From: Haliotis rubra
Lineage: Eukaryota
Length of the DNA: 64,000 nt
Assembly (NCBI RefSeq): GCF_003918875.1
Contig: NW_025767597.1
Location: forward strand, 124,001 to 188,000
Direction of reading: 5' to 3'
Shown here: positions 18,401 to 38,473 of the stretch, one piece after another
Position numbering within the stretch: the stretch's first letter is position 1
Layout of the letters: each line of letters starts with the position of its first letter
The notes under the pieces: model-generated
Databases searched by the model: none
Told to the model about the DNA's origin: nothing
The model's input: only the letters and a program-made list of their open reading frames with translations
Position numbers and translations under genes: made by a program

Positions 18401-21400
18401 TTAGTATGATAGAGCTTGGGATGGGACCACAGAGTTTCCGCCTTCCGTCGATCTACCAGATCATGGAGACGACATGACAAAAGTCTAACAATATGTCCTG
18501 TAGTCCACACATTTTAATGAACCAGCTTTACAAGAAACACATTTCAAAAGCAATATTCTCTCGAACTTCAGTAATCCTTCAAAACGGGTCGGCTGATATA
18601 AGTGTACATCTCAGTTTGGTAGAAGAGCCTGCAACTCTGATGCTGCTTGAAGCAATACAAATCTGATGAACATTTTTAAACATCGGAGAGTTGCTGTCCG
18701 CATTGTCCAGTTTCATGACAAACTGAACATAGTGTGTCTGTTGTCCACAGACACAGATCTATGATATCTTTCCCGAAACGAAACGTCCTGATATACATGC
18801 ACATGGTTTATGTCAGAGATAAGAGAGCAAAGATAAAACTAACAGCTGAAATGCCTTGTGTCAGGTCTTTGAAATATAGACACATGCCAAAGGGAAATGG
18901 AGTGGCCTCCCTTCCTCTCAAAATAATGTGTGACATAGTTCATCGTTGGTCCGGTAGACGTCAGGGCGCGGAGTGGTTGCGAGTAATGTTCATATTGGAT
19001 CGCTACTTTATATAATTCTTACAATCACATAGAACTTCCTAAGTTCCCAGACAAATTTCTTCATTGTTTATGAAAGGCTGACGCAGAAAATTACCAAAAT
19101 AATTAACAGTGTGTCATTGTTCAGAAAATATTTTTCGGCTGTACTATGCCATTAACCTATTGACGGACTAAAATGACCACTTTGAGAAATCCAATTAAGT
19201 TCTCAGTTCTCCGTAATATTAACCGCACTAGAAAACATCTCGAACATTTGTGATTTATAAAGTATCTGCTGCCAAATACAACTAAACTAATTATAAGATA
19301 AGTAAGACAATGATACAAGACTACTCACTGGTGGAAGGTTATCTTGTCGAGCGCTTTTCTTCCGTTGCTTTCAAAGAAACTGTAAAAAATATAACATGAT
19401 TCGTTTCATAATGACCTGCCAAAACATAACTGAATGAGTAAGTTTAGTTTTACGCCGCACTCAGTAATATTCCAGCTACATGGCGGTGGTCTGTATATAA
19501 TCGAGTCTAGACCACAATTCCGTGATCAACAGCATCAGCATCGATCTATGCAATTGGGATGCGATGACGTGTGTCAACCAAGTCAGTGAGCCCGACCACC
19601 CAATGCCGTTATGACATGCATGGTTTACTGAAGACCAATTCTAACAACGATCTTCTCGGCTTCCAAAACATAAGGTATTAGGACGTACCAGTAGGGGCAT
19701 GGTATATAATCAGTAGCATATATTAATAATAATAATAAATGGATATTTCTTATGCGCCATAGTCCATCCAGAGCATGCTCAAAGCGCTACATATAAAAAG
19801 AGTGACTAGAGTTCAAGAAGAAGATATGACAATTAGCCAAAAATAACCGTGAGAGTATTTTACAGTTATAGGTTGTAGACTTTTTTTGAAGAGGAAGGTT
19901 TTGAGTCCCGATTTGAATGCTTCTAGGGATGAAGCATTTTTTTATGGGAGTAGGAAGACTGTTCCATAGGGTTGGTGCTGCAAATTTGAATGACCTATGG
20001 CCAAAGTGTTTGAGACGAACTTGGGGAACTGAGAGAAGATGTTGATTCTGAGAGCGGAGAGAACGGGCAGGCATATATGTTGACAACATCTCAGAGAGGT
20101 ATGGAGGAGCTAGGCCGTGTTTGCAGCGGAAAACAAGAGTGCAGATCTTGAAATGAATTCTTGCTTCAACCGGCAGCCAATGCAGACTCTGGAGGATTGG
20201 GGTTATGTGAGTCCATTTGGATGTTTTAGTGACAACTCTGGCGGCAGCATTCTGAAGTTTTGAAGTCTGAAGAGAAGATCATTGGAGATTCCAAACAGTA
20301 GGCTATTGCAATAGTCAATCCTGGAGAGAACAAGTGACTGAGTGAGAACTTTAGCAGCATCTGTGATTACAAGATGGCGGATGTTACCAATAGAGTGGAG
20401 ATGGAAGTAGCCTACTCTACAGAGATGGTTCACATGTTGCTCCATGGTGAGACAAGGATCAAGATGAACACCTAGGTTTTTTACACTGGATGAAAGTGGG
20501 ATATCTGAGTTGGCTACTGTGATGTCCGTAGAGTTTATCCTTTTCAGACATTGCGATGTGCCAATCAACATAGCCTCAGTCTTATCATCTTTGAGCTTCA
20601 GCTCATTTGTCATCATCCATGAACTAATTGCCTTCGTGCACTGACTCACTCTAGATCTGGCTATTTGTACATCCTCTGGTTTGAAGGAATCCATCAATTG
20701 GAGGTCGTCTGCAAATGCGTGGTGATTCAGATCAAAGTTATCAATGACCTTCTCCAAAGGGTTTGTGTATAACACAAAGAGAAGCGGCCCAAGGACTGAG
20801 CCCTGGGGTACACCACACTCTAGGATCGTTGACTCAGAGATGCTTTCAGAGACAAGAACTGACTGACTCCTCATGCTCAGATAGGAACGGAACCAGGCCA
20901 ATGCATCCCCTTGTATGTTATAGTCATCCTGAAGACGGCTAAGGAGCTTCTGATGGTTGACCGTGTCGAACGCCGCTGAGAGATCAAGCAAGAGGAGAAG
21001 TGACACATTACCCAAATCCGCATGGCATCTCAAGTTATTCAGAATTTGAAGTAAAGGCGGTCTCGGTACTGTGCCTAGGACGATAGGCTGATTGGAATCT
21101 GTTCAGAAAATCATTTGAAGAGAGATAGGATCTGAGTCTGACATCAACTGCACGTTCAAGGATCTTGGAAAGGAAAGAGAGGTTGGAGACAGGTCTGTAA
21201 TTCTTGAGAGTATTGATATCCAAATTGTCTTTCTTAAGTAATGGCTTTACCACAGCTTGCTTGAACACCTCTGGAAAGACACCATTACCTAAGCTCAAGT
21301 TGATCAGTTTCGTGATAACTGGCAAAAGAGTCTCCAAAAAGTCATCAAGGAGACGAGTTGGCATCGGATCGAAAAGACACAATGTCTTTTTTGACCGTTT

Positions 21401-24400
21401 GATGAGTGCAGCTATCTCACCCTCAGTGAAAGAATCAAAGGTGTCCAGGCAGATCCCATCATCGGGTGGGCATGTTGAAGGATCCTGTGTGTCAAGAAAT
21501 GTTTGGTCAAAGCTTTTCCTGATATTTTCAATTTTACTTGAGAAGTAGGCTGAAAAATTGTCAGCAAGATCCTTGTCATTAGTGGACGGTGGTAATGGGG
21601 TATCATTCTTCTTGCCAAGTAGAGATCCCATGAATTTGTGATAGAAGGAAGGATTTTTCACATTGTCAGAGAGTTTCTTGGTACAGTAACTGGATTTGGC
21701 TCCTCTAAGAGCCCTAGCACAAGAGTTCCGCTCAGACTTATACAACTGACGGTGAATTTCAAGGCGACTCTTCCGCCATTTTCTCTCTGCAGCTCTGCGT
21801 TTCCGCTTGGCTAAGAGAACCTGCTCATTATACCAAGGAGTCCCTGATCTGACAATTATTTCCTTCAGAGCTGATGGAGCATGTTTATCTAAGAGAGATG
21901 ACAATGTGGATGAATACAACTCAGCCAGTTGGTTTACATCATCCGGGGGGTCTTGGAGTAAGTCAGAGTTTACAAGATCTCTTCGAAACTCAACATTGTC
22001 AATAGACTTGAGATTACGACAGGATTGTTTGATAGTCTGACGCTGAGGTCTGTCCATACTCCAGGTCATAGAAACCAGAAAGTGGTCGGAAAGTTGTATA
22101 TCCTGCACATTGACAGAAGACACTAAGGAACTACTTTCAGAGGATATCACCCAGTCAAGGATATGGCCTCCTTTATGTGTTGGAGCATCAACATACTGAC
22201 ACAAACTATGTTGTTTCATCTTCTTTGTATCTGAGCACTGATTGTTATCGTAGTGAATATTAAAATCACCTAGCAAAATAGTGTTCAACTGATTGTACCT
22301 CTCAACGAGTACAGACAACTCACCATGGAATACAGAGGTTGAAAGTTGGTTTTTCTTTGACGACGGTGGACGATACAAACACACAACACGAGCACAAGTA
22401 TTTCCAGAACTAATTTTAGTGTTGATTGACTCAAAGCTTTTGAATTCTTCCAAATTGTCTAAACATTCTATCTGAATGTTAGACCTATGTATCACTGCTA
22501 CACCCCCACCAGCGCGCTGGGATCTTGGAGCATGTATGCAGCTGTATCCAGGGGGTGTCAGCTCAGCGATTTTCACTTCATCCCCCTCTTTTCGTAACCA
22601 TGTCTCAGTGAGAAAAAGAATGTCAATATCATTTTCCTGAATCAAATCAGATAGTTCCAAAGTCTTGTTTTTTGCATGATTGAACGTTTATCAAGGAGAC
22701 ACTGAGTGTATTTGGAAATCTTCTAGGATAAACTTGAACCAGGTTGTTAAAGTTAACACCTGACCTCCTTGTTCCATCGTCCTTGAATCACTTTAATCCG
22801 TTTTGGTATCTTTCTGCCAGCTCTACATCCTCTTCTGGTTCGCTTTCTTAATGAAATTCTAAGATTATTCAGATGGTGAAGTAGTTCAGAGTTATGTCCC
22901 TTGGCAGTTGTTCCAAGATGTGCACTTGAACACTTTTCACCAATGGCAAGCAGAGTCTCCCTGCTGTAGGCTATTGTTGACTGATTGATCATTGTTACAC
23001 TGGCCGAGTCAGCTTGGGTTTTGAAGGCCTCAGCTACACCCTTGATTGGTGGTGAACTCAAGTTGACAATAAAATCAACCTTTATGAATGAGATTATTAT
23101 ACACAAAATCCACATTTCAGTCCCCAAAGTCTCAAAAATTGCAGCAATGTGTGGAGGAAATGATCATGTACAATATGATCAACTTTGTAGAATCAAATTT
23201 GTACAATAATCCAGTGAAAAAGTCCAAGTTTGTGAGAGCACAAAAGACATGCTGCTGCTACCAAGCGCAGTATCATACATATTACTTATTCTATATCATA
23301 TAAGGTTGCGTTGTCTCAGAAAAAAACATTAATAACAATTATATTAATCACAAGAATGTCTGTTCACTCACGTTTTAAACAGAATTGATTTCGGTCCCGA
23401 GATGGCTGTTACGTCGGGTCCAATAACAAGGGTAGATTCAAACCCAGGAGTAGACTTGAGGATTGCCCTGAGATGGACAAAATCTCGCCCCAGCTGTGCT
23501 CCAGATATTGTATCGGTGAAGGGCGGGGGAAAGTATGCAGGTTCTAGAGAACAACCAGAGAACGTTTTCGTGGTATCAATTTGTAATACACAGAGATGAA
23601 GATTCCAGGAAGATTTATTATGGTAAACAAAGATGACATAGCTATGCATATTATCCAGTGAGCTATAGAACATTACAATACCATTTCCCAGTTCAAATGC
23701 GGGTATCTTGTAGTTCCTGGAAATGGTGTAGTTCATCAGTTCCATGGCATTCGCAGGGTCCCACTGTCCGTGCTTCCGCTTCAGTAAATTTAGGGCAAAC
23801 ACAAGGTCCCATCCTACAGTCTTCACGAAGTCATTTACGTTGTCCCACATAGCACTTCAATGATAAAATGAAGAAGTTTATAAGTCAGCTGAAAATATCC
23901 AGAATATTGCGTGTACTCATATAGTTAGCACAATCATTTGTCATTCATGCATGCTGAACGGTATGAATCAGCTAAGCACTACTTATTTAGTATTGTTATG
24001 GCATTATAGTAGAGCTGCAAAAACAATATACGACATAGGACATATAGCTATACCGGTGTAAGTGGAGATTGCACTTGTACCCCCATGACCTGTTGGGTCA
24101 AAGGTCATAAAATCTCCAGGTGTTCCGCCTATCCGCAGGTAGCACGGAGACATCGCTTTAGCCAGCGTCTGGACTTTAGGTGATCTAGTATTAAAGCAAA
24201 GTTTATTTTCAAAGTTGCTTTAATATTTATAAACTTCAAAGAATATGCACCATATGAATGTATTTCATTGTAAAACTCAAACACTTAAGAGCTATTAATT
24301 TATCTGTATGAAGTACGCCCACTCACCTGAAATCAAGTCCATACCAATTAGCTGATATTGGTAGCATTGATGAATCAAATGTCACTCCAACGAAATGGTC

Positions 24401-24511
24401 ATTTATCAATCCTATTTCTTTGTCTGTGGCAACAGTTACAGAAACAGACTGACTGTGTGTACATTGCACATACAAGGAACAGAGAATAACGAGCACACGT
24501 CTCACATCCAT
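15481..24511 (-). CDS. HPSE-like: Heparanase-like GH79 copy C, 10 exons; intron-2 acceptor mutated and LINE in intron 4 (possibly non-functional)
   Basis: Exons 24327-24511, 24054-24184, 23682-23855, 23372-23543, 19329-19379, 18105-18305, 17168-17282, 16342-16454, 15900-16040, 15481-15634. Exons open; acceptor before exon 3 reads GAA instead of GAG (23856); intron 9 has a GC donor. Confidence 0.85.
16934..17070. repeat. 21-bp minisatellite, ~6.5 copies, gene C intron 7
   Basis: Unit cacagtacaatgcccaggtca with variants. Confidence 0.9.
17430..17545 (+). mobile_element. Short tRNA-like SINE relic, family 4 (also ~15218-15300 and ~31495-31615)
   Basis: B box GGTTCGAATCC followed by shared ggatggg...actagaa...gtaat(c/t)ccaaatataa in three places. 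Confidence 0.55.
17694..17815. mobile_element. Small MITE (~120 bp; duplicate at ~31773-31894)
   Basis: Imperfect TIRs caggg...cctttcacaaagc / gcttcgtgaaagg...ccctg. Confidence 0.55.
19431..19661 (-). mobile_element. SINE family 2 copy in gene C intron 4
   Basis: Family-2 body; orthologous copy in gene D at 33389-33620, so it predates the C/D duplication. Confidence 0.8.
19726..23267 (-). mobile_element. Near full-length non-LTR retrotransposon (L2/CR1-group LINE, APE endonuclease + RT), frameshifted
   Basis: ORFs 21035-22660 (LTETWL, GGGVA, YRPP, GDFN, SDH; NYRPVSNL), 20203-21033 ([24 protein letters not shown]) and 19787-20089 (WNSLP). (TTA)n tail at ~19726-19738; imperfect TSD cagtagcatatatta / cagtatcatacatatta; empty site in copy D at ~33670-33685. 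Confidence 0.93.
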
Positions 24512-25863
24512 GGTGTCAGCAGTAAACTAAATCAGATAAAAACGTTTTCTTTTAATCTGGAGCACTGACCTCGAGTCGAGGACACATTGCTGATAAACGA
24601 TATAATTAAAAGTAGTTGGCCTGAAATAGAAACTTTAGGTCAGAACTGTGCATCAAAGGTCATCCATATAAACTTCAGTATACAGCATTGTTATTCTGAT
24701 TCCAAAAGTTTACTAGGTTGCATATCAGGTAGTGTTTCTCACGAAACGATGACAGTGCAATGATTCGATGCATTTCCTTTGTTCCGTGGGGAGTCAAAGT
24801 CAGCAGCACAATAATGATGGTTTTCAAATTTATGATATATAGTAGCCATTTCAATGGGCACAAACTGTTTCTTCATGTATGTGAACCTGAATTCAAATAT
24901 AAAGCAAAGTAATTTAGGCAAGACGTTTAACTTGCCCTTCGATGAGCTGATGATCAATAACTATTACATAGGCACTTGCCTTGTACTACTTTACTCATCT
25001 GAACTGCCAAGACAGAAAACCAGTAAGACTGTCTCATCTGTTCCATATTCATATCCATGTGTAAAGATTCAGTGAGATAAAAACTCTTCAAAAGAGTTTA
25101 TTACTCTTTTGAAGACTTCCATTATTTGTTTGGGTATGTCGAGAAGTATTTCCTGCAGCTCCAGCCAGTGGTGTTAATATTCCACAAGGTTTAAGGTAGA
25201 GACGAGCAAGCTCTTTTTACGAAAACTCCAGAAGCATATATGATAGACACATAAGTGTAGGAAGTTTGGTCCCGTGTATTTTCAGCTGACCAACTGACTA
25301 AAGTAGCATATGTTTATGACGGATGCCACCGACAGGACGCACTCACTTGTTGTGAACACCCGGTAATACTATTTGATAGAGATTCACGTACTCTTGATTT
25401 AGTCGGAATCGTATAATTGACTCTGCTTTGACAGAGATTTATTTATGCATATTCGTATGAATATATATTTGCAATTATCCTTGCATACAGATCTCACAGC
25501 TATTTTGAGTTTTAGGTCCAAAGCAATCTGGATTTTCTTTCGCACTGACATTCTATACATATGGATTTGGGAAGGGTTTTCCCCGTTTCTATTAACATTT
25601 CTCAGTGTAATACAACATAAATGTGTTGCAATTGCAGACGTGTTTTGCAAGATCGTAATATACAGCATGTAGTTTTTTTAACAGTACTTGAGACCACACG
25701 GTTTATGTGTACAAGGAATTATCACAGACCAACCCGATGAAATTCAATGAAACATTATTAATAATCATACACTATGAATGGCAGACGATCTACACCTTCG
25801 AGCTGCTATAACACTCCTGCATACAAGGCACCAGGCCTTTTTCGCCAATCCAGGATCTTCCTG

Positions 25864-25865
<2 letters not shown>

Positions 25866-25913
<48 letters not shown>
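25866..25913. repeat. (TG)n microsatellite
   Basis: ~24 TG units; the paralogous position in the duplicate falls in the gap 35944-36104. Confidence 0.95.
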
Positions 25914-25915
<2 letters not shown>

Positions 25916-26802
25916 CAAGCATGTGTAAGTTCGAATCACAATCATACCATTTGAGTTTTGAGAACCATGTAATTACAAAAGCAGTTCTTTTCTCATTTTT
26001 AGATACATGTACTTTGGTTTACAATATTTTGTCAATGGAATAAAAAAGACATATCGTTAATACTATCCTATGTTTCTTACGCGTGTTATTATCAGTAACA
26101 ACATGTTCCGTGCGTGATGCATTAAAACAGTTCCGATTTATATACTCATAAAACTGTGGCTTATTAGTTGGCAGAAGAACATATTGCAGAAAGTATTTCT
26201 GACAGACTGTTAACAATGAGGGGAGATAACCAACTCCCTTCGAAATGGCTTAAGACTTTACTGGAGAAGTGTGCCCTGCATCTTATCGAATATCAGGTAA
26301 CAGGTTATCTTCCCGTCTACGTTTTCTGCATGTGAATTCTGGCCAAACATCAGCAATTATGAGACCGCAAAAAGGAAATTCTGCAACGGCACTAAGCGCA
26401 ACGAGTCCAAAATATTCACATGAGATCATCTTCAGCTGCCACAGTTAAGATTCTAGGATTATGGACAATGCTGGGCCGAATGGACAATATTAAGCTTCTC
26501 TTCCTGCACAACCCTAGTGAAGCATATCTTCAACCTGGTATATCACCCCTCGCTAGCATAGTACCAGATCCATGATACATGATCTACCCGATGTGGCCAA
26601 CAAATATGAATTATCAGGCGCACAATAGAAATAAATTAAGTCTGGAGAATTTCCATGTAAGGGTTCATGGGAAAGCATGGTACAACAAGCTCTGTGTCTA
26701 AATATATGCAGTGGAGAAAGGCAACAGCGTCAAGATATGCATGGGGTTGGTGATATTCACATCTACCTTGCTCCATATTGACTCTGGAATCTGTGTGTAT
26801 GG

Positions 26803-27045
26803 GGACCCGTGAAGATCCGGGTTAGAATTGGTCTTCAGCAACCCATGCTTGTTGTATGAAGCGACTAACGGAATTTGGTGGTCAGACTCGCTGACTTGGT
26901 TGACACATGTTATCGTATACCAATTGCGTAGATCGATGCTCATTGCGTTGATCACCGGATTGTCTGGTCCAGACTCGATTATTTACCGACCGCCGTCATA
27001 TAGCTGGAATATTGCTGAGTGCGGCGTTAAGCAAACTATCAATCA
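26803..27045 (+). mobile_element. SINE family 2 copy, C-D spacer
   Basis: gacccgtgaagatccgggttagaattggtcttcagcaacccatgc...gctgagtgcggcgttaag; duplicate at 36973-37197. Confidence 0.82.
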
Positions 27046-27528
27046 ATGTAACGTCAGGACATTGTCTATCCTGTAACCGCGTATATGAGGATCAATGACT
27101 TTACTGCGAAGGTTCTCATTGAACAGAGAAATCTTCCTAGTGAGTCTCCATTTAAGTCTCGAATATATCTTCTTTGGGTGGCATTTTAGAAGCTGTAAAG
27201 TACAAAATAGACAAACTTTATAGATAACAAATTCTTTGCGACGTTTCGATACGGATTCTAGCACCTGCTTGGCACTCTCGTAATAAAGACGTTGTTATCC
27301 ATAAAGTTTGTCGATTTTCCATTGTCAGTCGCACTGACCAATGAGGTACTGAAATTGTATGTACCCCCCCAAACTATTGGGAAATAAAGAGTGTTCATTC
27401 ATTATCATAATTATATGACATTGATTCTGTATGGATACGGTCATCTTCGACGCTAAGCACGATTCTCCAGGACAACTCCTCTTTGGATATCATATAGAAG
27501 TAATACACATAAAGGGTGAAAGTGTATA

Positions 27529-28078
27529 TAGTGCGTTTGGCTTAAAAGCGGACCGATGAATTGCAATCTAACTAAAAAACTAATATACATATAATACTCA
27601 ATGAAACGCTGATCATAATCAAAATATCAGACCAACTCTGTGATTTGTTTGCAGAATTTATGTCCTAAAATCAAAAAAGTTATTTAACAAACTATCATTA
27701 CAATATTGACACAGTTCACTATTTGTTACGAGGGAGGAGTGCTGAGAAAGGGACAGCCAGGTGTTAGAGAAGCACGTGCACAAGTGCCGACAAAGTTATT
27801 GATTCATTAACCTGTGCTGTGCCGTCTCCATCCTTTCTCGCACACCCGGCTGTCCCTTTCTCTGCACCCCTCCCGCGTAACAAATAGTGAACTGTGTCGA
27901 TATTTTAATGATAGTTTGTTAAACAACTTTTTTTGTTTTTAGGACATAAATTCTGCAAACACCTCTCAGAGTTGGTGTGACGTTTTCATTATGATCAGTG
28001 TTTCATTGAGTATTTTATGTTTATAAGTTTTCGAGTTAGATTGCAATTCATCGGTCCGCTTTTGAGCCAAACGGACTA
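27529..28078. mobile_element. Fold-back MITE (~550 bp, almost fully palindromic), TA target, Tc1/mariner-type
   Basis: Ends tagtgcgtttggcttaaaagcggaccgatgaattgcaatctaact / agttagattgcaattcatcggtccgcttttgagccaaacggacta; arms ~245 bp; TA on both sides. Confidence 0.88.
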
Positions 28079-28374
28079 TAGACGCCAACTTCTTTAACAT
28101 GAATGACACGACTCACAGTACTTCACCTGATGAGTCAGTAAGAATATATTGCGATTCGTGTCCCTCACATAACAGAAGTTGACATCCATAAGTGTTCACC
28201 CTTTCAGGCATTGGTCGGTATTTGCCATATTTAACTCAAACGTACTCGTGTAATATTACCAGTGTACGCTCTTTTACTCCTTGCGTTTGGTTGCATGATA
28301 CAATAAAAAAGCCAACTTTGCATTGGAACTTTGTTTTAGTTCGCTACATATTACATCAAAACTACCAGTCAGCA

Positions 28375-31300
28375 TCACTTGCAGATGTCCACATCAGCAT
28401 CAGGGAACACAACGAATCCGAAGGTCGTGGCTGGCAGCTGGAGGCTCCCACCATACGCTCGTTCAGGGGGCATTTCAGGGATGGTGTCGTTCACATAATC
28501 CAGTCGTTTACCATTAAGAGTCACATTCCTGAAATTACACAGTTAGTGTTATAGAATCGATGTTATTGTTGTGGCATTCTGAGAACGTCCTGGTCACAAA
28601 AACCTATCAGCTATGCAGTTGTTCAATTCAGGCTCGCTCACTTTGTTGGCACGTGTCATCGTATCCCAGTTGCGTAGATCGATGCTTATTCCTGTAAAGA
28701 CTAGGTTGTCTGATGCAGACTCGACTTGTTTACAGACCGCCGCAACATAGCTGTAGACAGAGACAGACAGACAGACAGACACAGACACACAGACAGACAC
28801 ACACACACACAAAGAAAAACAAAACAAAAAACCCAGTTGTTCAATAAGTGCTAGTCACAATGTCTGTTCAACAGCACGAATCACGGTTTATAAGGTAAGA
28901 ACTTTATACACTTTATATAGTGTGTTATATACATGTGTTGTGATTATATTCGTCATGACAAAAATATTGAATGGCGACTCTTTATATAGTGTGTTATATA
29001 CATGTGTTGTGATTATATTCGTCATGACAAAAATATTGAATGGCGACTCCTGTGAATAATGTAAAGGAAAATTATGTAAAAATTGTATGAATGGATCACT
29101 GAAATTTATTCACGTGCTCGCGAAAATAAATAACATCTGTTCTAAGCAAGTATCACGGGTTCGTATACTCGCCTAGAAGTAAGATCTGGGAATTCTGGAC
29201 TGAGCCAGAACACATCCATGTTGGTCTTGAACTGAGGGAAGGTGACGGTGGTGGTGAAGTTGTTGACGTTGACGATATAAGCTACAACGCTGCCTGGTTT
29301 ATATCTGTAGAGACTGAAACAATACATCGTGGACATTGTGAGTAAAGCTGCAAGTTTGTTAAGAAATTACTCAGTTCCTGGTGGCAATAACGCCGGATAT
29401 GTTTCAGATATGGTTATATTTTAATGCAGATATTCATTCTGCAGATGCCGGCGATGAAATATGAACCATCAACATGCCTGCCTCTCATTTATATGTAAAA
29501 ACAGATTACTCATAAACGAAGCAAGGACTAGCGGCAACATCATCACGCCTATGTGAAGGAGATCATGACATGGTCTATACAGCTCATTAATATACTGCAG
29601 CTCGTTTATAAATTAATTATTAAACCAGAGCGGCTACGAGAATGCATCATCGATCAACAGATGCTGAGGAATGTTTTCGACTTTCACTGGCAGAATATCG
29701 CATGTTCTGCTTTGGGCTTAACAAGGTAAAACAATCCATTTCATCTTTCTAATGGAACATGAGACTCGGAGATAATCTTGTTGATTGGGCAGGAAAAAAG
29801 GTTGACGCTAATAAATTAATGTTAATTAGAAAATCCAAAATGGATGCCAGTGGCAGAGTGAAATCAGATCTATAAATGTATATCTCTTAGAAACTGTCGC
29901 AGTTATCTGTTTTTTAGATTCAGAATCCAGAATGGTTAAATCTCAAACAGAATTGACAGGAGCTATCATGCCGTCGTTGTGTCAGTTGTAAAGTATAGCG
30001 TTTTGTTTAATTTCGGATCCAAACATTGTTCAGCGACTCTTCTCGTTTCTTAAGACGAGACTCAATAGTCGGGGTGTTTGTTACCTATAATTTAGATAGT
30101 GCACTAGACTTGACAACCACAAAACGTTTCATATCCGAATTATACATGGGATCCGAACATAAAGACATTTCCTAACGCGAAATGTTTTAGATCCGAAATT
30201 ACACCTGAATCCGAAGCCGCGTAACACTGCGTACTGTGTGCGCCCGGAGTGTACGTCTAAGTACCAGTACGTCTGCTTGTACCATGGCTCTCATGTTTTT
30301 TATTCTGACTGATGAAATATCATCGTCACTAATTATCTCCTGTACCCATTATGACACATTCCAACATACTTTTCCTGTTTTGCACAGTGGGCGTAGACTC
30401 TAAAACTGTTGGTTGAGTTGGTCTGTACAGATAACACCTTGTACCCAACCAGCCTCTTGTAGAGCAATGTCAGATAATAGTCCTGGAAAGTGACACATTC
30501 AGACTTAATATCATACAGCATAAAATACGTGCCATCACATAGTCAAATTTGTGTTATTACTCTTATAGACATGAGCCAGTAGTAAGACACGTGATCAGGA
30601 ACAACACGTGGACACAGGTTTCATTACAAGCCTGAGGGATCCATGTTCGCAGAACGAGTTACAGCAACAGTCCAACATTCGCAACACATCCCCATTCCAT
30701 CCACACTCACACACTCACACATACGTTCACCAGACTAAGTGTAATACTACGTACTACATTTTGGTATCTTGATAGTGATTACGTTCATGGTGAAAGGTAA
30801 TAAAATCCTTTAGTTTCCATTATTACAAGATGTCGCAAATGTATGCAGTGAGGCAGTTGGAAACTGAGGCCTTCAGATAATCGTGTTTAGCTGCTGAATT
30901 TGATGATTCCCCACGCTTCAGCAGAATTCAGTATTTATTCCCTTGTTTCCTGTTGAACGCTTCACACAACAATGCCCAGGTCACACAGTACAATGCCCAG
31001 GTCACACCGAACAATGGTCAGGTCACACCGTGCAATGGTCAGGTCACACAGTACAATGACCAGGGCACACAGTACAATGCCCAGGGCACACAGTACAATG
31101 CCCAGGACACACAGTACAATGCCCAGGTACAATGCCCCAGGTGCATCACTATTACGTGCTCTACAATATATCAGAGGTGAACACTCTGTGGTTCTGCAAA
31201 CCCTAAGGAAACTGAACAAGATAAGTTTTGCACCTACCGGATAGGGTTCAAACGTGTTCATTTCGATGAGAGAATAGTTTAGCCCATAGTACGATTGTCT

Positions 31301-34300
31301 TAACGCCCCTTTAAGTCCGATCCGTGCTGCAATCCCGAGCTTGTCTAACCATCTGAAACATCGACGACAATACCATGTACATGTTCATGTCAATATACAA
31401 ATCATGCTTTGTTTTTGTTTAAATGAGTACATTATCTATACTATGATAGTGTTATAAGCTCCAGGCAGCAGTAACCCAGGGCTATCAATGACTATCAATG
31501 TGTGCGATTAGGTGCCTGACCCTGCAAGTGTGGGTTCGAATCCAGGATGGGACTTGACCCCATAGAAATGTACTAGAATCCGAACATTACTCAGAAGGTG
31601 TAATCCCAAATATAATTTACTGGACACTTTCTAAGAAAGCCTTCTGTTTTCAAACTTATATGTTAGTCATTAACTCGTGTGGTGCACAGTTTACCTGAAT
31701 TATCACACAAACTATGCAAAATATGATGCAATACACATATCTACAACTTCAGGTAAAAGAAGGTTTGTAAACCAGGGCCTCCTTTCACAAAGCACTAATG
31801 TGATCGTAAGTCCCTACGGTAACCTTAGTACAATGTTAAAGAATGGGAGTTAAGGTTATTCTTAGTAAAGGTTGCTTCGTGAAAGGACCCCCCTAACATG
31901 ACCGTTCGTTTTGTTTGAAATATATCCTTAAGTTTTGAGTCTGTGAATTCCGGGACTGCTTTGATTTGTAGGGCACGGTTCTAATGACAAAGTGTTAAAA
32001 GAGCTGACACAATGCATAATGGCGAGTGTACATGTAAGCCATCGTTCCTTGTGCATTTACTGCACTCATAATACCATCCTCCGGTTTTGCTGGTGTACTC
32101 AGCAGATACATTTTGAAAGCATACGAAAAGGAACGTTGACCTTTTGAATACTGACATACTCACAGAAAGCCGGCTACATATCTGTCAGATAGTGCCGGGG
32201 CTCCCCCTCCCGAGAAAGACGATGTCTCACCAAGCAACAATGGAGTGTTGGGGTCGGCAGGGGTGGTGACGTTACGTACAATATCAATGAATGTTATCAG
32301 GCTGTCCATCACTTTGGGGTCGATAAAGGTCTCCACTTTAGCATTGCCCTCGAAGTCGTAGTAACTAAACATTCAATTGATTTCGAAATTAGGTTTTGCA
32401 AAATGTGGTGTTTAAGGTCGCATGCAAAGGCAACAACAAGAACCAGATTTAAACATGACTTACAGTCCGTTTGGCTCAAAAGCGGACCGATGAATTGCAA
32501 TCTAACTCGAAAACTAATAAACATAACATACTCAATGAAACGCTGATCATAATCAAAACATCATACCAACTCTGTGAGGTTTTTGCAGAATTTTTGTCCT
32601 AAAAATAATAAAGTTGTTTAACAAACTATCATTAAAATATTGACACAGTTCACTGTTTGTTACGAGGGAGGAGTGCAGAGAAAGGGACAGCCGGGTGTTC
32701 GAGAAGCACGTTCACAGATAAAGTTATTTATTCATTAACCTGTGCTGTACCGTCTTCATCCGTTCTCGAACACCTGGCTGTCCCTTTCTCTGCACTCCTC
32801 CCTCGTAACAAATAGTGAACTGTGTCAGGACACCTGGGGTCGTCAAAGGGAAATGGAGTAGCCTCTCTTCCCTCTCAAAATAATGTGTGACATAGTTCAG
32901 CGTTGGTCCGGTAGACGTCAGGGCGCGGAGTGTATGCGAGCAATGTTCATATTGGATCGCTACTTTATATAATTCTTACAATCACATAGAACTTCCTAAG
33001 TTCCCAGACACATTTCTTCATTGTTTATGAAAGGCTGACGCAGAAAATTACCAAAATAAATAATAGTGTGTCATTGTTCAGAAAATATTTTTCCGTCGTA
33101 CTATGCCATTAACCTATTGACGGACTAAAATGACCACTTTGAGAAATCCAATTAAGTTCTCTGTTCTCCGTAAAATATTATCCGCATTAGAAAACATCTC
33201 GAACATTTGTGATTTATAAAGTATCTGCTGCCAAATACAACTAAACTAACTATAAGATAAGTAAGACAATGATACAAGACTACTCACTGGTGGAAGGTTA
33301 TCTTGTCTAACGCTTTTCTTCCGTCGCTTTCAAAGAAACTGTAAAAAATATAACATCATTCTCTTCATAATGACCTGCCAAAACTTAAGTGAGTGAGTGA
33401 GTTTAGTTTTACGCCGCACTCAGTAATATTCCAGCTACATGGCGGTGGTCTGTATATAATCGAGTCTAGACCACAATCCCGTGATCAACAGCATCAGCAT
33501 CGATCTACGCAATTGGGATGCGATGACGTGTGTCAACCAAGTCAGTGAGCCCGACCACCCGATCCCGTTATGACATGCATGGTTTACTGAAGACCAATTC
33601 TAACACGGATCTTCTCGGCTTCCAAAACATAAGGTATTAGGACGTACCAGTAGGGGCATGGTATATAATCAGTAGCATATATTACTTATTCTATATCATA
33701 TAAGGTTGTCTCAGAAAAAACATTAATAACAATTATATTAATCACAAGAACGTCTGTTCACTCACGTTTTAAACAGAATTGATTTCGGTCCCGAGATGGC
33801 TGTTACGTCGGGTCCAATAACAAGGGTAGATTCAAACCCAGGAGTAGACTTGAGGATTGCCCTGAGATGGACAAAATCTCGCCCCAGCTGTGCTCCAGAT
33901 ACCGTGTCGGTGAAGGGCGGGGGAAAGTATGCAGGTTCTAGAGAACAACCAGAGAACGTTTTCGTGGTATCAATTTGTAATACACAGAGATGAAGATTCC
34001 AGGAAGATATATTATGGTAAACAAAGATGACATAGCTATGCATATTATCCAGTGAGCTATAGAACATTACAATACCATTTCCCAGTTCAAATGCGGGTAT
34101 CTTGTAGTTCCTGGAATTGGTGTAGTTCATCAGTTCCATGGCATTCGCCGGGTCCCACTGTCCGTGCTTCCGCTTCAGTAAATTTAGGGCAAACACAAGG
34201 TCCCATCCTACAGTCTTCACGAAGTCATTTAGGTTGTCCCACATAGCACCTCAATGATAAAATGAAGAAGTTTATACGTCAGCTGAAAATATCCAGAATA

Positions 34301-34905
34301 TTGCTTGTACTCATATAGTTAGCACAATCATTTGTCATTCATGCATGCTGAACGGTATGAATCAGCTAAGCACTATTTATTTAGTATTGTTATGGCATTA
34401 TAGTAGAGCTGCAAAAACAATATACGACATAGGACATATAGCTATACCGGTGTAAGTGGAGTTTGCACTTGTACCCCCATGACCTGTTGGGTCAAAGGTC
34501 ATAAAATCTCCAGGTGTTCCGCCTATCCGCAGGTAGCACGGAGACATCGCTTTAGCCAGCGTCTGGACTTTAGGTGATCTAGTATTAAAGCAAAGTTTAT
34601 TTTCAAAGTTGCTTTAATATTTATAAACTTCAAAGAATATGCACCATATGAATGTATTTCATTGTAAAACTCAAACACTTAAGAGCTATTAATTTATCTG
34701 TATGAAGTACGCCCACTCACCTGAAATCAAGTCCATACCAATTAGCTGATATTGGTAGCATTGATGAATCAAATGTCACTCCAACGAAATGGTCATTTAT
34801 CAATCCTATTTCTTTGTCTGTGGCAACAGTTACAGAAACAGATTGACTGTGTGTACTTTGCACATACAAGGAACAGAGAATAACGAGCACACGTCTCACA
34901 TCCAT
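28375..34905 (-). CDS. HPSE-like: Heparanase-like GH79 copy D, 10 exons, apparently intact, C/E chimera
   Basis: Exons 34721-34905, 34448-34578, 34076-34249, 33766-33937, 33288-33338, 32164-32364, 31238-31352, 30370-30482, 29173-29313, 28375-28528. ELGN|EP and LLGETSS retained; GC donor at intron 9. Confidence 0.92.
28911..29049. repeat. 69-bp tandem duplication in gene D intron 9
   Basis: ctttatatagtgtgttatatacatg...gaatggcgactc occurs twice; single copy at the equivalent position in E (~38957-39025). Confidence 0.9.
30963..31142. repeat. 21-bp minisatellite, ~8.5 copies, gene D intron 7
   Basis: Same unit as 16934-17070 with a different copy number. Confidence 0.9.
32463..32828. mobile_element. 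Fold-back MITE of the same family, independent insertion, right arm truncated
   Basis: TA|cagtccgtttggctcaaaagcggaccg start; absent from copy C (empty site catgacttagtatg at ~18395-18408). Confidence 0.85.
33389..33620 (-). mobile_element. SINE family 2 copy in gene D intron 4
   Basis: (GAGT)n plus family-2 body; duplicate of 19431-19661. Confidence 0.8.
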
Positions 34906-36972
34906 AGTGTCAGCAGTAAACTAAATCAGATAAAAACGTTTTCTTTTAATCTGGAGCACTGACCTCGAGTCGAGGACACATTGCTGATAAACGACATAAT
35001 TAAAAAGTAGTTGGCCTGAAATAGAAACTTTAGGTCAGAACTGTGCATCAAAGGTCATCCATATAAACTTCAGTATACAGCATTGTTATTCTGATTCCAC
35101 AAGTTTACTAGGTTGCATATCAGTTAGTGTTTCTCACGAAACGATGACAGTGCAATGATTCGATGCATTTCCTTTGTTCCGTTGGGAGTCAAAGTCAGCA
35201 GCACAATAATGATGGTATTCAAATTTATGATATATAGTAGCCATTTCAATGGGCACAAACTGTTTCTTCATGTATGTGAACCTGAATTCAAGTACAAAGC
35301 AAAGTAATTTAGACAAGATGTTTAACTTGCCCTTCGGCGAGCTGATGATCAATAACTATTACATAGGCACTTGCCTTGTACTACTTTACTCATCTGAACT
35401 GCCAAGACAGAAAACCAGTAAGACTGCCTCATCTGTTCCATATTCATATCCATGTGTAAAGATTCGGTGAGATAAAAACTCTTCAAAAGAGTTTGTTACT
35501 CTTGTGAAGACTTCCATTATTTGTTTTGGTATGTCGAGAAGTATTTCCTGCAGCTCCAGCCAGTGGTGTTAATATTCCACAAGGTTTAAGGTAGAGACGA
35601 GCAAGCTCTTTTTACGAAAACTCCAGAAGCATATATGATAGACACATAAGTGTAGGAAGTTTGGTCCCGTGTATTTTCAGCTGACCAACTGACTAAAGTA
35701 GCATATGTTTATGACGGATGCCACCGACAGGACGCACTCACTTGTTGTGAACACCCGGTAATACTATTTGATAGAGATTCACGTACTCTTGATTTACTCG
35801 GAATCGTATAATTGACTCTGCTTTGACAGACATTTATTTATGCATATTCGTATGAATATATATTTGCAATTATCCTTGCATATAGATCTCACAGCTATTT
35901 TGAGTTTTAGGTCCAAAGCAATCTGGATTGCACCAGGCCTTTTNNNNNNNNNNNNNNNNNNNNNNNNNNNNNNNNNNNNNNNNNNNNNNNNNNNNNNNNN
36001 NNNNNNNNNNNNNNNNNNNNNNNNNNNNNNNNNNNNNNNNNNNNNNNNNNNNNNNNNNNNNNNNNNNNNNNNNNNNNNNNNNNNNNNNNNNNNNNNNNNN
36101 NNNNATCACAATCATACCATTTGAGTTTTGAGAACCATGTAATTGCAAAAGCGTTTCTTTTCTCATTTTTAGATACATGTACTTCGGTTTACAATATTTT
36201 GTCAATGGTATAAAACAGACATATCGTTAATACACTCCTATGTTTCCTAAGCGTGTTATTTTCAGTAACAACATGTCCTCCACCCCGTGCGTGATGCATT
36301 AAAACAGTTCCGATTACTATACTCATAAAACTGTGGCTTATAAGTTGGCAGAAGAAACATATTGCAGAAAGCATTTCTGACAGACTGATAACAATGAGGG
36401 GAGATAACCAACTCCCTTCGAAATGGCTTAAGACTTTACTGGAGAAGTGTGCCCTGCATCTTATCGAATATCAGGTAACAGGTTATCTTCCCGTCTACGT
36501 TTTCTGCATGTGAGGTCTGGCCAAATATCAGCAATATTGAGACCGCGAGAAGGAAATTCTGCAACGGTACGGGTACTACGCGCAGCGAGTCCAAAATCTT
36601 CACATGAGATCATCTTCAGCTGCCACAGTTAAGATTCTAGGACTATGGACAATGCTGGGCCGAATGGACAATATTAAGCTTCTCTTCCTGCACAACCCTG
36701 GTGAAGCATATCTTCCATCGGGTATATCACCCCTCCCTAGCATAGTACCAGATCCATGATACATGATACATGATACGATGTGGCCAACAAATATGAATTA
36801 TCAGGCGCACAATAGAAATAAATCAAGTCTGGAGAATTTCCATGTAAGGGTTCATGGGAAAGCATGGTACAACAAGCTCTGTGTCTAAATATATGCAGTG
36901 GAGAAAGGCAACAGCGTCAAGATATTCACATCTACCTTGCTCCATATTGACTCTGGAATCTGTGTGTATGGG

Positions 36973-37197
36973 GACCCGTGAAGATCCGGGTTAGAATTGG
37001 TCTTCAGCAACCCATGCTTGTTGTATGAAGCGACTAACGGAATTGGGTGGTCAGACTCGCTGACTTGGTTGACACATGTCATCGTATCCCAACTGCGTAG
37101 ATCGATGCTCATTGCGTTGATCACCGGATTGTCTTGTCTCCATTATTTACAGACCGCCGTCATATAGCTGGAATATTGCTGAGCAAACTATCAATCA
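36973..37197 (+). mobile_element. SINE family 2 copy, D-E spacer
   Basis: Duplicate of 26803-27045 with small deletions. Confidence 0.8.
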
Positions 37198-37624
37198 ATG
37201 TAACGTCAGGACATTGTCTATCCTGTAACCGCGTATATGAGGATCAATTACTTTACTGCGAAGGTTCTCATTGGACAGAGAAATCTTTCTAGTGAGTCTC
37301 CATTTAAGTCTCGGATATATCTTCTTTGGGTGGCATTTTAGAAGCTGCAAAGTACAAAATAGACAAACTTTATAGATAACAAATTCTTTACGACGTTTCG
37401 ATACGGATTCTTGCACCTGCTTGGCACTCTCGTAATAAAGACGCACTGACCAATGAGGTGATGAAATTGTATGTACCCCCCCCAAACTATTCATTCATTA
37501 TCATAATTATATGACATTGATTCTGTATGGATACGGTCATCTTCGACGCTAAGCACGATTCTCCAGGACAACTCCTCTTTGGATATCATATAGAAGTAAT
37601 ACACATAAAGGGTGAAAGTGTATA

Positions 37625-38177
37625 TAGTGCGTTTGGCTCAAAAGCAGACCGATGAATTGCAATCTAACTCAAAAACTAATAAACATATAATACTCAATGA
37701 AACGCTGATCATAATCAAAATATCAGACGAACTCTGTGATTTGTTTGCAGAATTTATGTCCTAAAATCAAAAAAGTTAATTAACAAACTATCATTACAAT
37801 ATTGACACAGTTCACTATTTGTTACGAGGGAGGAGTGCAGAGAAAGGGACAGCCAGGTGTTAGAGAAGCACGTGCACAAGTGCCGACAAAGTTATTGATT
37901 CATTAACCTGTGCTGTGCTGTGCCGTCTCCATCCTTTCTCGCACACCCGGCTGTCCCTTTCTCTGCACTCCTACCTCGTAACAAATAGTGATCTGTGTCG
38001 ATATTTTAATGATAGTTTGTTAAACAACTTTGTTCTTTTTAGGACATAAATTCTGCAAACACCTCTCAGAGTTGGTCTGACGTTTTCATTATGATCAGTG
38101 TTTCATTGAGTATTTTATGTTTATAAGTTTTTGAGTTAGATTGCAATTCATCGGTCCGCTTTGAGCCAAACGGACTA
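37625..38177. mobile_element. Fold-back MITE, duplicate of 27529-28078
   Basis: Same TIRs and the same flanking sequence within the segmental duplication. Confidence 0.88.
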
Positions 38178-38473
38178 TAGATGCCAACTTCTTTAATGTG
38201 AATGACACGACTCACTGCACTTCACCTGATGAAGGAGTAAGGATATATTGCGATTCGTGTCCCTCACATAACTGAAGTTGACATCCATAAGTGTTCACCC
38301 TTTCAGGCATTGGTCGGTATTTGCCATATTTAACTCAAACGTACTCGTGTAATATTACCAGTGTACGCTCTTTTACTCCTTGCGTTTGGTTGCAGGATAC
38401 AATTAAAAAGCCAACCTTGCAATGGAACTTTGTTTTAGTTCGCTACATATTACATCAAAACTACCAGTCAGCA

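What the first reader, a model, noticed from the sequence alone, without database searches (positions are those of the whole stretch)
30370..30482. Gene D is a chimera made by unequal crossover between C and E inside exon 8
Seen: D exons 1-7, their introns and the upstream spacer match C; D intron 8, exons 9-10 and the downstream spacer match E. Exon 8 switches: it starts DYY with a C-type intron 7 (C DYYLTVL, E DYWLTLL, D DYYLTLL) and ends AKQEK|gtatg as in E (C AKQDR|gtact). Inference: a C-type catalytic TIM barrel was fused to an E-type C-terminal beta-sandwich, and D now looks intact while both parents carry lesions.
Basis: seen in the sequence. Interest (0 to 1): 0.7.

Follow-up and report, generated by a model that had tools for sequence, protein, structure and literature searches.

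The report
Hybrid heparanase gene from unequal crossover
In a row of seven heparanase-like genes in the blacklip abalone genome, gene D is a clean hybrid of its two neighbours, joined inside exon 8, most likely by a misaligned crossover that also duplicated about 10 kb; this is a textbook process, seen here in a new gene family.

Summary
The window holds seven minus-strand GH79 heparanase-like genes (A–G, 10 exons each). D exon 8 is exactly 30370-30482.

- **Hybrid pattern:** 5' of exon 8, D matches C. 3' of it, D matches E.
- **Switch point:** it lies between 30474 (last C-type site) and 30372 (first derived E-type site), inside a 94-bp stretch where C and E are identical.
- **Duplicated unit:** the stretch from C exon 8 to D exon 8 (16342-30482) occurs again as D exon 8 to E exon 8 (30370-40476).
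- **Outgroup:** Haliotis asinina has the E and C orthologues side by side with no D. C and E are therefore ancestral and D is derived.
- **Gene state:** D has an intact 478-codon frame with the catalytic motifs. C has lost the exon-3 acceptor (AG>AA) and carries a LINE in intron 4. E has a 4-bp deletion in exon 1 and a damaged exon 4.

The best reading is homology-driven unequal exchange, an "anti-Lepore"-type duplication (about 0.82). An assembly false duplication is unlikely but not excluded. Public contigs cannot bridge exon 8, although copy-specific k-mer depth fits full diploid dose. This is a new member of a known kind and of modest interest.

The parts
30370..30482 (-). Exon 8 of gene D (113 nt, codons 344-381), the hybrid exon
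   Evidence: Exon model with AG acceptor and GT donor. It aligns to human heparanase DYWLSLLFKKLVG...HC. It has two D-unique substitutions, at 30468 and 30402.
30373..30473 (.). Interval that must contain the exchange point
   Evidence: The last C-type sites are 30475/30474 (TAT against TGG in E). The first derived E-type sites are 30372/30370. Site 30467 is also E-type, but it carries the state shared by B, E and F, so it is weak evidence. C and E are identical over 30373-30466 (94 bp).
28375..34905 (-). Gene D: 10 exons, intact 478-codon frame, heparanase-like (GH79)
   Evidence: One search gives the coordinates, splice sites and absence of internal stops. One search shows the ELGNEP and GETSS motifs. 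One search gives PF03662 at 42.7 bits against a cutoff of 23.1. One search matches the human heparanase 50 kDa chain.
15481..24511 (-). Gene C, parent of D exons 1-7 (the downstream gene in the direction of transcription)
   Evidence: (C,D) clade with 100/100 support for exons 1-7; the AU test rejects (D,E) at p = 5e-9.
38474..46134 (-). Gene E, parent of D intron 8 and exons 9-10 (the upstream gene); now a pseudogene in its 5' half
   Evidence: (D,E) clade with 91/90 support for exons 9-10; the AU test rejects (C,D) at p = 2e-4. Lesions are shown.
16342..30482 (.). Duplicated unit U1: C exon 8 through C exons 7-1, the spacer and D exons 10-9, to D exon 8
   Evidence: Self-BLAST and global alignment with U2: K2P 0.010-0.066 in most 500-column blocks.
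30370..40476 (.). Duplicated unit U2: D exon 8 through D exons 7-1, the spacer and E exons 10-9, to E exon 8
   Evidence: Homology between the units stops at exon 8 at both outer ends.
23856..23857 (-). Lesion in C: the exon 3 acceptor is AA instead of AG. The next AG, 1 nt downstream, would shift the frame
   Evidence: B, D, E and F all read TTGAG|GTGCT; C reads TTGAA|GTGCT.
19720..23278 (-). 3,559-bp LINE-like insertion in C intron 4, absent from D
   Evidence: Gap in the U1/U2 alignment. ORFs of 541 and 276 aa look like an endonuclease plus reverse transcriptase (judged by eye, not scanned against Pfam).
46094..46095 (-). Lesion in E: 4-bp deletion in exon 1, 40 nt after the ATG, which shifts the frame
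44830..45000 (-). Lesions in E exon 4: the acceptor is CG instead of AG (44999-45000), there is a 3-bp in-frame deletion, and the last ~29 nt plus the donor are replaced (homology ends at 44859)
35944..36104 (.). Run of 161 N in the D-E spacer (not filled, not inferred)
   Evidence: The assembly paper's scaffolding gaps are 100 N each (29,200 bp added for 292 joins), so this run is probably a mask rather than a scaffold join.

Best explanation
Gene D is the hybrid product of a homology-driven unequal exchange (non-allelic homologous recombination). Two neighbouring paralogues of a tandem heparanase-like (GH79) array misaligned.

The ancestral order along transcription was ...F - E - spacer - C - B.... 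Exon 8 of C paired with exon 8 of E inside a 94-bp tract of identity. The exchange produced E - spacer - [C exons 1-7 / E exons 9-10] - spacer - C, so about 10 kb was duplicated.

D therefore encodes a C-type signal peptide and catalytic (beta/alpha)8 barrel joined to an E-type C-terminal beta domain. The join falls in the exon that encodes the last barrel helix and the first two strands of that domain.

Shown here:
- the hybrid pattern;
- the duplicated unit;
- the position of the switch;
- the absence of D in an outgroup;
- the intact frame of D and the lesions in C and E.

Inferred:
- that the event was a crossover rather than a replicative template switch;
- that D is expressed and active;
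- that later gene conversion explains the uneven divergence between the two units.
For: 1. **Switch of parentage at exon 8.** Block-wise informative sites are. In exons: 135:9 against 3:46, p = 1.3e-31. ML trees give (C,D) 100/100 for exons 1-7 and (D,E) 91/90 for exons 9-10, and AU tests reject the alternatives at 5e-9 and 2e-4.
2. **Breakpoint** between 30474 and 30372, within exon 8 and in frame.
3. **Whole unit present twice in direct order**, with homology ending at exon 8 on both outer sides.
4. **Exon 8 is one of the two best C-E identity tracts.** It is 95.6% identical and exon 1 is 95.0%, against 79-87% in exons 2-6 and 9-10. dS between C and E in exon 8 is 0. The substrate for misalignment therefore lies where the switch lies.
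5. **Similar age of both halves.** dS is 0.056 for C-D (exons 1-7) and 0.078 for D-E (exons 9-10), against about 0.48-0.65 for the non-parental pairings.
6. **Outgroup.** In H. asinina (GCA_037392515.2) the E orthologue (P0001) is followed after 4.7 kb by the C orthologue (P0151), then the B orthologue. The C orthologue has C/D-type introns 1-7 and a C-type 3' end. The E orthologue has an E-type intron 7 and an E-type 3' end. D's N part is 93% identical to P0151 and its C part 92% identical to P0001.
7. **Equal rates since the split.** 37 C-derived against 27 D-derived sites (p = 0.26), and 4 D-derived against 7 E-derived.
8. **Against an artefact.**
   - There is no N or gap at the junction.
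   - The assembly was built from Nanopore overlaps and QuickMerge with at least 5-kb alignments. A 113-bp exon could not seed a join under those settings.
   - In run X1, contigs whose k-mers are specific to one copy have depth 172-192, and depth rises with copy number in the window (r = 0.94).
   - The paper reports 291.7 Gb of Illumina data from that animal. That gives at most about 150-188 for diploid 31-mers and 94 or less for haploid ones.
   - C-type, D-type and E-type specific k-mers are all present in X1.
Against: - **No single molecule across exon 8.** I saw none joining a C-type intron 7 to an E-type intron 8. The runs offered were Logan contigs of 150-460 bp that break or switch copy inside the shared exon. 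One contig that looked like linkage (X1 record 4) turned out to be a graph path through 56 shared bases.
- **The depth argument is indirect.** It assumes that X1 is the 291.7-Gb library, and the tool itself warns that contig depth is not a copy number.
- **Known haplotype redundancy.** The assembly mixes Nanopore reads from two animals and was 1.9 Gb before purging.
- **Divergence cannot decide.** Another contig (C960) is collinear with C2707:340-380 kb at 92-98%, the same range as U1 against U2.
- **No doubling in the second organism label.** In runs X3 and X4 the 400 bp where D and E are identical shows no doubling of depth.
- **Uneven divergence.** It is 1.6% over 23278-25534, about 5% in the rest of the C/D 5' part, and 0% over 29661-30063. 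This needs later gene conversion under my model.
Confidence: 0.82

Rival explanations
1. False tandem duplication made by the assembler. The true locus is E - spacer - C. U1 and U2 are two haplotypes (or the haplotypes of the two animals whose Nanopore reads were pooled), strung in series through the shared exon 8.
For: The pre-purge assembly was 1.9 Gb against 1.38 Gb final, with many haplotigs, and two individuals were pooled. C960 against C2707:340-380 kb shows that 2-8% divergence with large indels occurs between probable haplotigs in this assembly. No read-level bridge of exon 8 was obtained.
Against: - A mis-join would have to pass through only 113-129 bp of similarity. The long-read overlappers and QuickMerge (-ml 5000) cannot use that.
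- There is no gap at the junction.
- Copy-specific contigs in X1 sit at 172-192. That is the diploid dose expected from 291.7 Gb, not the 94 or less expected for one haplotype.
- dS of 0.056-0.078 is 4-6 times the genome-wide heterozygosity of 1.3-1.4%.
- D-lineage 5' sequence, distinct from C, occurs in three samples under two organism labels.
Confidence: 0.08
2. The same duplication arose by a replicative template switch (a fork stalling and switching between sister or homologous templates), using the exon 8 identity as the landing site, rather than by a meiotic crossover.
For: The identity tract is only 94 bp. From general knowledge, that is short for classical meiotic non-allelic recombination. 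The product would be indistinguishable in sequence.
Against: The junction is seamless, with no inserted or deleted bases and no second breakpoint. Nothing in the sequence demands more than a simple exchange.
Confidence: 0.06
3. D is an older third gene whose 5' half was overwritten by gene conversion from C and whose 3' half was overwritten from E.
For: Gene conversion clearly acts in this array. Exons 1, 7 and 8 are homogenised among paralogues. A 2.25-kb block at 1.6% divergence and a 400-bp identical block lie inside the units. The H. asinina C and E orthologues share a near-identical exon 8 plus the first 25 nt of intron 8.
Against: The matching tracts would have to cover about 4.5 kb plus 3.5 kb of spacer on one side and 2 kb plus the same spacer on the other. 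They would leave no D-specific remnant and meet at one point. The outgroup has no gene between E and C.
Confidence: 0.04

Closest known systems
Anti-Lepore haemoglobin genes and the CYP11B1/CYP11B2 chimeric gene of glucocorticoid-remediable aldosteronism (from general knowledge, not tested here)
   Same: An unequal crossover between two adjacent paralogues leaves both parents in place. A hybrid lies between them that has the 5' part of the downstream gene and the 3' part of the upstream gene, and the intervening unit is duplicated.
   Different: Here the family is GH79 heparanase-like and the host is a mollusc. The exchange lies in a 113-nt exon at a domain border. Both parents now carry lesions while the hybrid is intact. 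No phenotype or expression data exist.
Red/green opsin hybrid genes in primate X-linked arrays (general knowledge)
   Same: A tandem array of near-identical genes in which exchange inside the gene creates hybrids that recombine functional modules.
   Different: Opsin parents are about 98% identical along their whole length. Here the parents are only 79-87% identical in most exons and unalignable in introns, so exchange is confined to a few homogenised exons.
Human heparanase HPSE (PDB 5E8M, 5LA4)
   Same: Same fold family. The acid/base motif N-E-P and the nucleophile motif G-E-T-S are present. Exon 8 aligns to DYWLSLLFKKLVG...HC just before the C-domain (C-domain 413-543 per PMC10398610).
   Different: Their substrates are unknown.

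Membership tests
GH79 heparanase-like glycoside hydrolase | Match to Pfam PF03662 (Glyco_hydro_79n) above the gathering score | tested here: met
   the ORF spanning D exons 3-4 scores 42.7 bits against a cutoff of 23.1. The other exons are too short to score alone.
GH79 heparanase-like glycoside hydrolase | Catalytic acid/base Glu in an N-E-P motif and nucleophile Glu in a G-E-T-S motif | tested here: met
   D has ELGNEP (the Glu codon is split over the exon 3/4 junction) and LGETSS. One search aligns exon 6 to the human GETSS region. Both positions are invariant or nearly invariant in 38 homologues.
GH79 heparanase-like glycoside hydrolase | (beta/alpha)8 barrel followed by an all-beta C-terminal domain | tested here: met
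   model of the H. asinina orthologue P0151 (same length, 93% identical to D's N part), pLDDT 90.5. It shows alternating strand and helix up to helix 343-354, then only strands to 469. D itself was not folded, because the joined model was not submitted.
GH79 heparanase-like glycoside hydrolase | Endo-beta-glucuronidase activity | not testable with these tools
   Needs expression and an enzyme assay.
Hybrid gene from non-allelic homologous recombination (duplication or 'anti-Lepore' type) | The hybrid lies between both parents, with the 5' part of the downstream parent and the 3' part of the upstream parent | tested here: met
Hybrid gene from non-allelic homologous recombination (duplication or 'anti-Lepore' type) | The whole stretch between the two parental breakpoints is present twice, in direct order | tested here: met
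   16342-30482 against 30370-40476.
Hybrid gene from non-allelic homologous recombination (duplication or 'anti-Lepore' type) | A single seamless switch inside a tract of parental identity | tested here: met
   the switch lies in 30373-30473, the identity tract is 94 bp, and the reading frame is kept.
Hybrid gene from non-allelic homologous recombination (duplication or 'anti-Lepore' type) | An outgroup shows the parents adjacent without the hybrid | tested here: met
   (H. asinina). The nearest relatives of H. rubra could not be examined.
Hybrid gene from non-allelic homologous recombination (duplication or 'anti-Lepore' type) | Physical molecules span the junction, and both units are at full dose | tested here: inconclusive
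   only short contigs, none bridging.: copy-specific depth of 172-192 fits the diploid dose, but this rests on an assumption about the run.
Hybrid gene from non-allelic homologous recombination (duplication or 'anti-Lepore' type) | The reciprocal deletion haplotype exists in the population | not tested
   Needs a population survey.

The most novel reading that the evidence does not exclude
The homogenised exon 7-8 block may be a recurrent, perhaps favoured, exchange point at the barrel/C-domain border. Abalone heparanase-like arrays would then repeatedly re-pair catalytic barrels with C-terminal domains, and D would be a working replacement assembled from the good halves of two decaying parents.

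Hints:
- B's exons 9-10 also group with D and E (99.7/99 support) although its 5' part does not.
- All H. rufescens copies have F-like C parts with different N parts.
- The H. asinina C and E orthologues share exon 8 plus the start of intron 8.
Probability: 0.2. Interest if true: 0.5.

Novelty: new member of a known kind. Interest (0 to 1): 0.3.

Why it matters
It is a clean, datable natural example of domain re-pairing by unequal exchange in an invertebrate glycosidase array. One event created a new barrel/C-domain combination, and that hybrid is now the only one of the three genes with an intact frame and intact splice sites. For annotators of the abalone genome it explains why C, D and E are easily mis-modelled. 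For enzymologists it offers a natural chimera for asking what the heparanase C-domain contributes. It does not reveal a new mechanism.

Tried and rejected
1. **Junction ORF search.** I searched the 62-aa ORF that reads through D exon 8 and both intron edges, a signature of the junction, in the word-indexed protein collection. I hoped gene callers had picked it up on other assemblies. There were no candidates.
2. **Longer ORF search.** The same search with the 160-aa exon 3-4 read-through ORF found nothing. I then used the exhaustive representative search once to obtain a full-length abalone protein (P0001) and reach other assemblies.
3. **Reads across the junction.** Only Logan contigs of 150-460 bp were available. 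None bridges exon 8.
4. **X1 record 4 as linkage.** I first took it as linking D's unique exon 8 site to a C-like intron 7. K-mer tracing showed it is a path that passes from D into C through 56 shared bases, so I dropped it.
5. **Depth in the second organism label (X3, X4).** It does not double where D and E are identical. This could mean no duplication there, or a second copy more than 3% away from the reference. I left it unresolved.
6. **The N run at 35944-36104 as a scaffold join.** That would allow D and E to be alleles placed in tandem. I rejected it as unlikely because the paper's scaffolding gaps are 100 N. I did not fill or infer the N.
7. **Divergence level as a test of alleles against paralogues.** I rejected it because probable haplotigs in this assembly reach the same divergence.
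8. **Faster evolution of C than D.** Contigs of the second organism suggested it. With H. asinina as outgroup the rates are equal, so those contigs simply belong to the D lineage.
Full report
**What is in the window.** All relevant genes are on the minus strand.

- Clustering of stop-to-stop ORFs and exon-by-exon alignments show seven tandem paralogues, A to G in plus-strand order. Each has 10 exons.
- The D exon 3-4 ORF hits Pfam PF03662 (GH79) above the gathering score.
- D exon 6 aligns to the nucleophile region of human heparanase, and D exon 8 to DYWLSLLFKKLVG...HC.
- The genome's size and contig count match the blacklip abalone assembly GCA_003918875.1. Proteins named Haliotis rubra sit on contigs of exactly 433,103 and 100,236 bp, the lengths of C2707 and C960.

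**Gene models.**

| Gene | Span | State |
|---|---|---|
| C | 15481-24511 | Frame open; exon 3 acceptor is AA, not AG (23856-23857), and the next AG, 1 nt on, would shift the frame; 3,559-bp LINE-like insertion in intron 4 (19720-23278) |
| D | 28375-34905 | Uninterrupted 478-codon frame; AG acceptors throughout; GT donors except a GC donor in intron 9 that C, E and F share; signal-like N-terminus; ELGNEP and GETSS motifs |
| E | 38474-46134 | 4-bp deletion 40 nt after the ATG; CG in place of the exon 4 acceptor; last ~29 nt of exon 4 and its donor lost |

D exon 8 is 30370-30482, exactly the finding's coordinates. I assembled these frames only inside local scripts, from the window file. Exons were searched one by one by reference. 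The fold was predicted for the H. asinina orthologue P0151 instead.

**The hybrid pattern.**

- In a three-way alignment of the C, D and E gene regions, every block 5' of exon 8 has D=C!=E far above D=E!=C. Every block 3' of exon 8 has the reverse.
- In exons alone the counts are 135:9 (exons 1-7) against 3:46 (exons 9-10), Fisher p = 1.3e-31.
- Maximum-likelihood trees give (C,D) 100/100 for exons 1-7 and (D,E) 91/90 for exons 9-10. AU tests reject the opposite groupings at 5e-9 and 2e-4.
- Site by site, intron 7 of D is C-type up to 30496, and the exon starts C-type at 30475/30474 (TAT; E has TGG).
- Site 30467 is E-type, but it carries the state that B, E and F share. Sites 30372/30370 and all of intron 8 are E-type.
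- The exchange therefore lies in 30373-30473. C and E are identical over 30373-30466.
- D has two private changes in the exon, at 30468 and 30402.

**The duplicated unit.**

- Self-BLAST and a global alignment show that 16342-30482 (C exon 8, C exons 7-1, spacer, D exons 10-9, D exon 8) is repeated as 30370-40476 (D exon 8, D exons 7-1, spacer, E exons 10-9, E exon 8).
- Homology ends at exon 8 on both outer sides.
- This is the exact product expected when exon 8 of C pairs with exon 8 of E. Both parents are kept, the hybrid lies between them, and the spacer is present twice.
- Exon 8 is, with exon 1, the most similar stretch between C and E: 95.6% and 95.0%, against 79-87% in exons 2-6 and 9-10. 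dS between C and E in exon 8 is 0.

**Polarity and age.**

- *Outgroup order.* In H. asinina the locus (L019) reads E orthologue (P0001), a 4.7-kb spacer, C orthologue (P0151), B orthologue, then an A-type gene. There is no gene between E and C.
- *Which genes are ancestral.* The C orthologue carries C/D-type introns 1-7 and a C-type 3' end, and the E orthologue carries an E-type intron 7 and an E-type 3' end. C and E are therefore the old combinations and D is the derived one.
- *D's two halves.* D's N part is 93% identical to P0151 and its C part 92% identical to P0001.
- *Older paralogues.* Older E-like paralogues elsewhere in the genome follow E through exon 8 into E's intron 7.
- *Age of the two halves.* dS is 0.056 for C-D in exons 1-7 and 0.078 for D-E in exons 9-10, against 0.48-0.65 for the non-parental pairs. 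Omega is 0.17-0.28.
- *Rates.* Rates since the split are equal with H. asinina as outgroup (37:27 and 4:7).
- *Uneven divergence between the units.* It is about 1.6% over 23278-25534, which covers exons 1-4 and the upstream 1 kb. It is about 5% in the rest of the C/D 5' part and about 3.6% in the spacer. There are no differences over 29661-30063. I read this as later gene conversion. That is an inference.

**Domain meaning.**

- The model of P0151 (pLDDT 90.5) has alternating strands and helices up to helix 343-354, then only strands to residue 469.
- Exon 8 (codons 344-381) encodes that last helix and the first two strands.
- In human heparanase the C-domain is residues 413-543, and a segment of the 8-kDa chain (Gln36-Ser55) works together with it (PMC10398610). 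If chain 5LA4 starts at residue 36, exon 8 starts at about residue 404.
- D therefore pairs a fully C-type barrel with E-type C-terminal strands.
- By analogy with the human enzyme, the N-terminal strands 21-46 (C-type in D) probably also belong to the sandwich. I did not check this on coordinates.

**Real or artefact?**

The runs offered were all Logan contigs.

- Laid on 27500-33400 at 97% likeness or better, they are 150-460 bp long and end or switch copy inside the shared exon. The direct test failed.
- Many 'other letters' are simply the C or E letters.
- D-lineage 5' sequence, clearly distinct from C, is present in three samples under two organism labels.
- In X1 every k-mer of the listed contigs exists in the window. 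Contigs specific to one copy have depth 172.6 and 191.7, a contig 84% shared by D and E has depth 265, and depth correlates with copy number in the window (r = 0.94).
- The paper reports a single 291.7-Gb Illumina library from the sequenced animal and a genome of 1.24-1.56 Gb. That gives about 150-188 for diploid 31-mers and 94 or less for one haplotype.
- If X1 is that library, C-type, D-type and E-type sequences are each at diploid dose. That means separate loci, not alleles.
- The assembly route (wtdbg, DBG2OLC, QuickMerge with at least 5-kb alignments) gives no way to join through 113 bp.
- The scaffolder's gaps are 100 N, so the window's N runs of 150-212 are probably masks.

Cautions:
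- The tool warns that contig depth is not a copy number.
- Nanopore reads of two animals were pooled.
- The assembly had heavy haplotype redundancy before purging.
- C960 is collinear with C2707:340-380 kb at 92-98%, so divergence alone cannot decide.
- The second organism's runs show no doubling where D and E are identical.

I put the artefact at about 0.08.

**Verdict.** Mechanistically this is a standard unequal-exchange duplication, of the anti-Lepore or CYP11B chimera type (general knowledge). It appears here in a mollusc GH79 array, with the join at a domain border and the hybrid as the only undamaged gene of the three. It is a new member of a known kind, of modest interest.

No N was filled.

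Noticed in passing
window 19720-23278: A 3.56-kb LINE-like element on the minus strand sits in C intron 4 and is absent from D. It has a 541-aa ORF with endonuclease-like and RT-like sequence, followed by a 276-aa RT-like ORF in another frame. It is a post-duplication insertion, or a difference between haplotypes.
   Followed up: partly
G000:C960:1-40000 (L011-L014) vs G000:C2707:340001-380000 (L015-L018): The 100-kb contig C960 is collinear with part of the window's own scaffold at 92-98% identity, with many indels. It is probably a haplotig that purging missed, or else a large segmental duplication. It carries E-like and F-like heparanase paralogues.
   Followed up: partly
window 6387-7012 (B exons 9-10) vs 38474-39308 (E) and 28375-29313 (D): B's exons 9-10 group with D and E (support 99.7/99; 91-92% identical to E). 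B's exons 2-6 are no closer to E (76-83%) than to C. This suggests an older exchange of the same 3' module.
   Followed up: partly
exons 1, 7 and 8 of genes B-F, e.g. window 17168-17282, 16342-16454, 48623-48737: Exons 1, 7 and 8 are 88-97% identical among old paralogues, whose other exons are 69-88% identical. dS between C and E in exon 8 is 0. In H. asinina (L019:2702 and 15703) the E and C orthologues share a near-identical exon 8 and the first 25 nt of intron 8. Localised gene conversion looks recurrent.
   Followed up: partly
L020 (H. rufescens) and proteins P0153-P0155, P0159: All H. rufescens copies have F-like C-terminal parts (85-87% identical to F). Their N-terminal parts are closest to different H. 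rubra genes (P0154 is 87% identical to C/D). This points to other module mixing or concerted evolution in that species.
   Followed up: no
window 29171-29172, 15898-15899, 39166-39167, 48068-48069: Intron 9 has a GC donor (AG|GCGAGT or AG|GCAAGT) in C, D, E and F but a GT donor in B and G. It is a conserved GC-AG intron within the array.
   Followed up: no
window 32461-32826, 27527-28083, 37620-38179: A repeat of about 370 bp with very high copy number (contig depth 10^4-10^5 in all runs) lies in D intron 5 and, as an inverted pair, in both spacers. C has unrelated sequence at the matching place (18403-18888). These are independent insertions after the duplication.
   Followed up: no
window 23278-25534 vs 33678-35929; 29661-30063 vs 39656-40058: Blocks of very low divergence (1.6%) or none lie inside units that otherwise differ by 2-6%. 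They are probably gene conversion after the duplication, or over-polishing of the assembly with reads of one animal.
   Followed up: partly
window 58758-59021: A tandem repeat with a 33-bp period (self-matches at offsets of 33, 66, 99 and 132) lies in an intron of gene G.
   Followed up: no
run X7: A small run (118 million letters) of the second H. rubra sample holds about a tenth of the words of the D gene region, roughly half of the exon share. It may be the published transcriptome and could show whether D is expressed.
   Followed up: no
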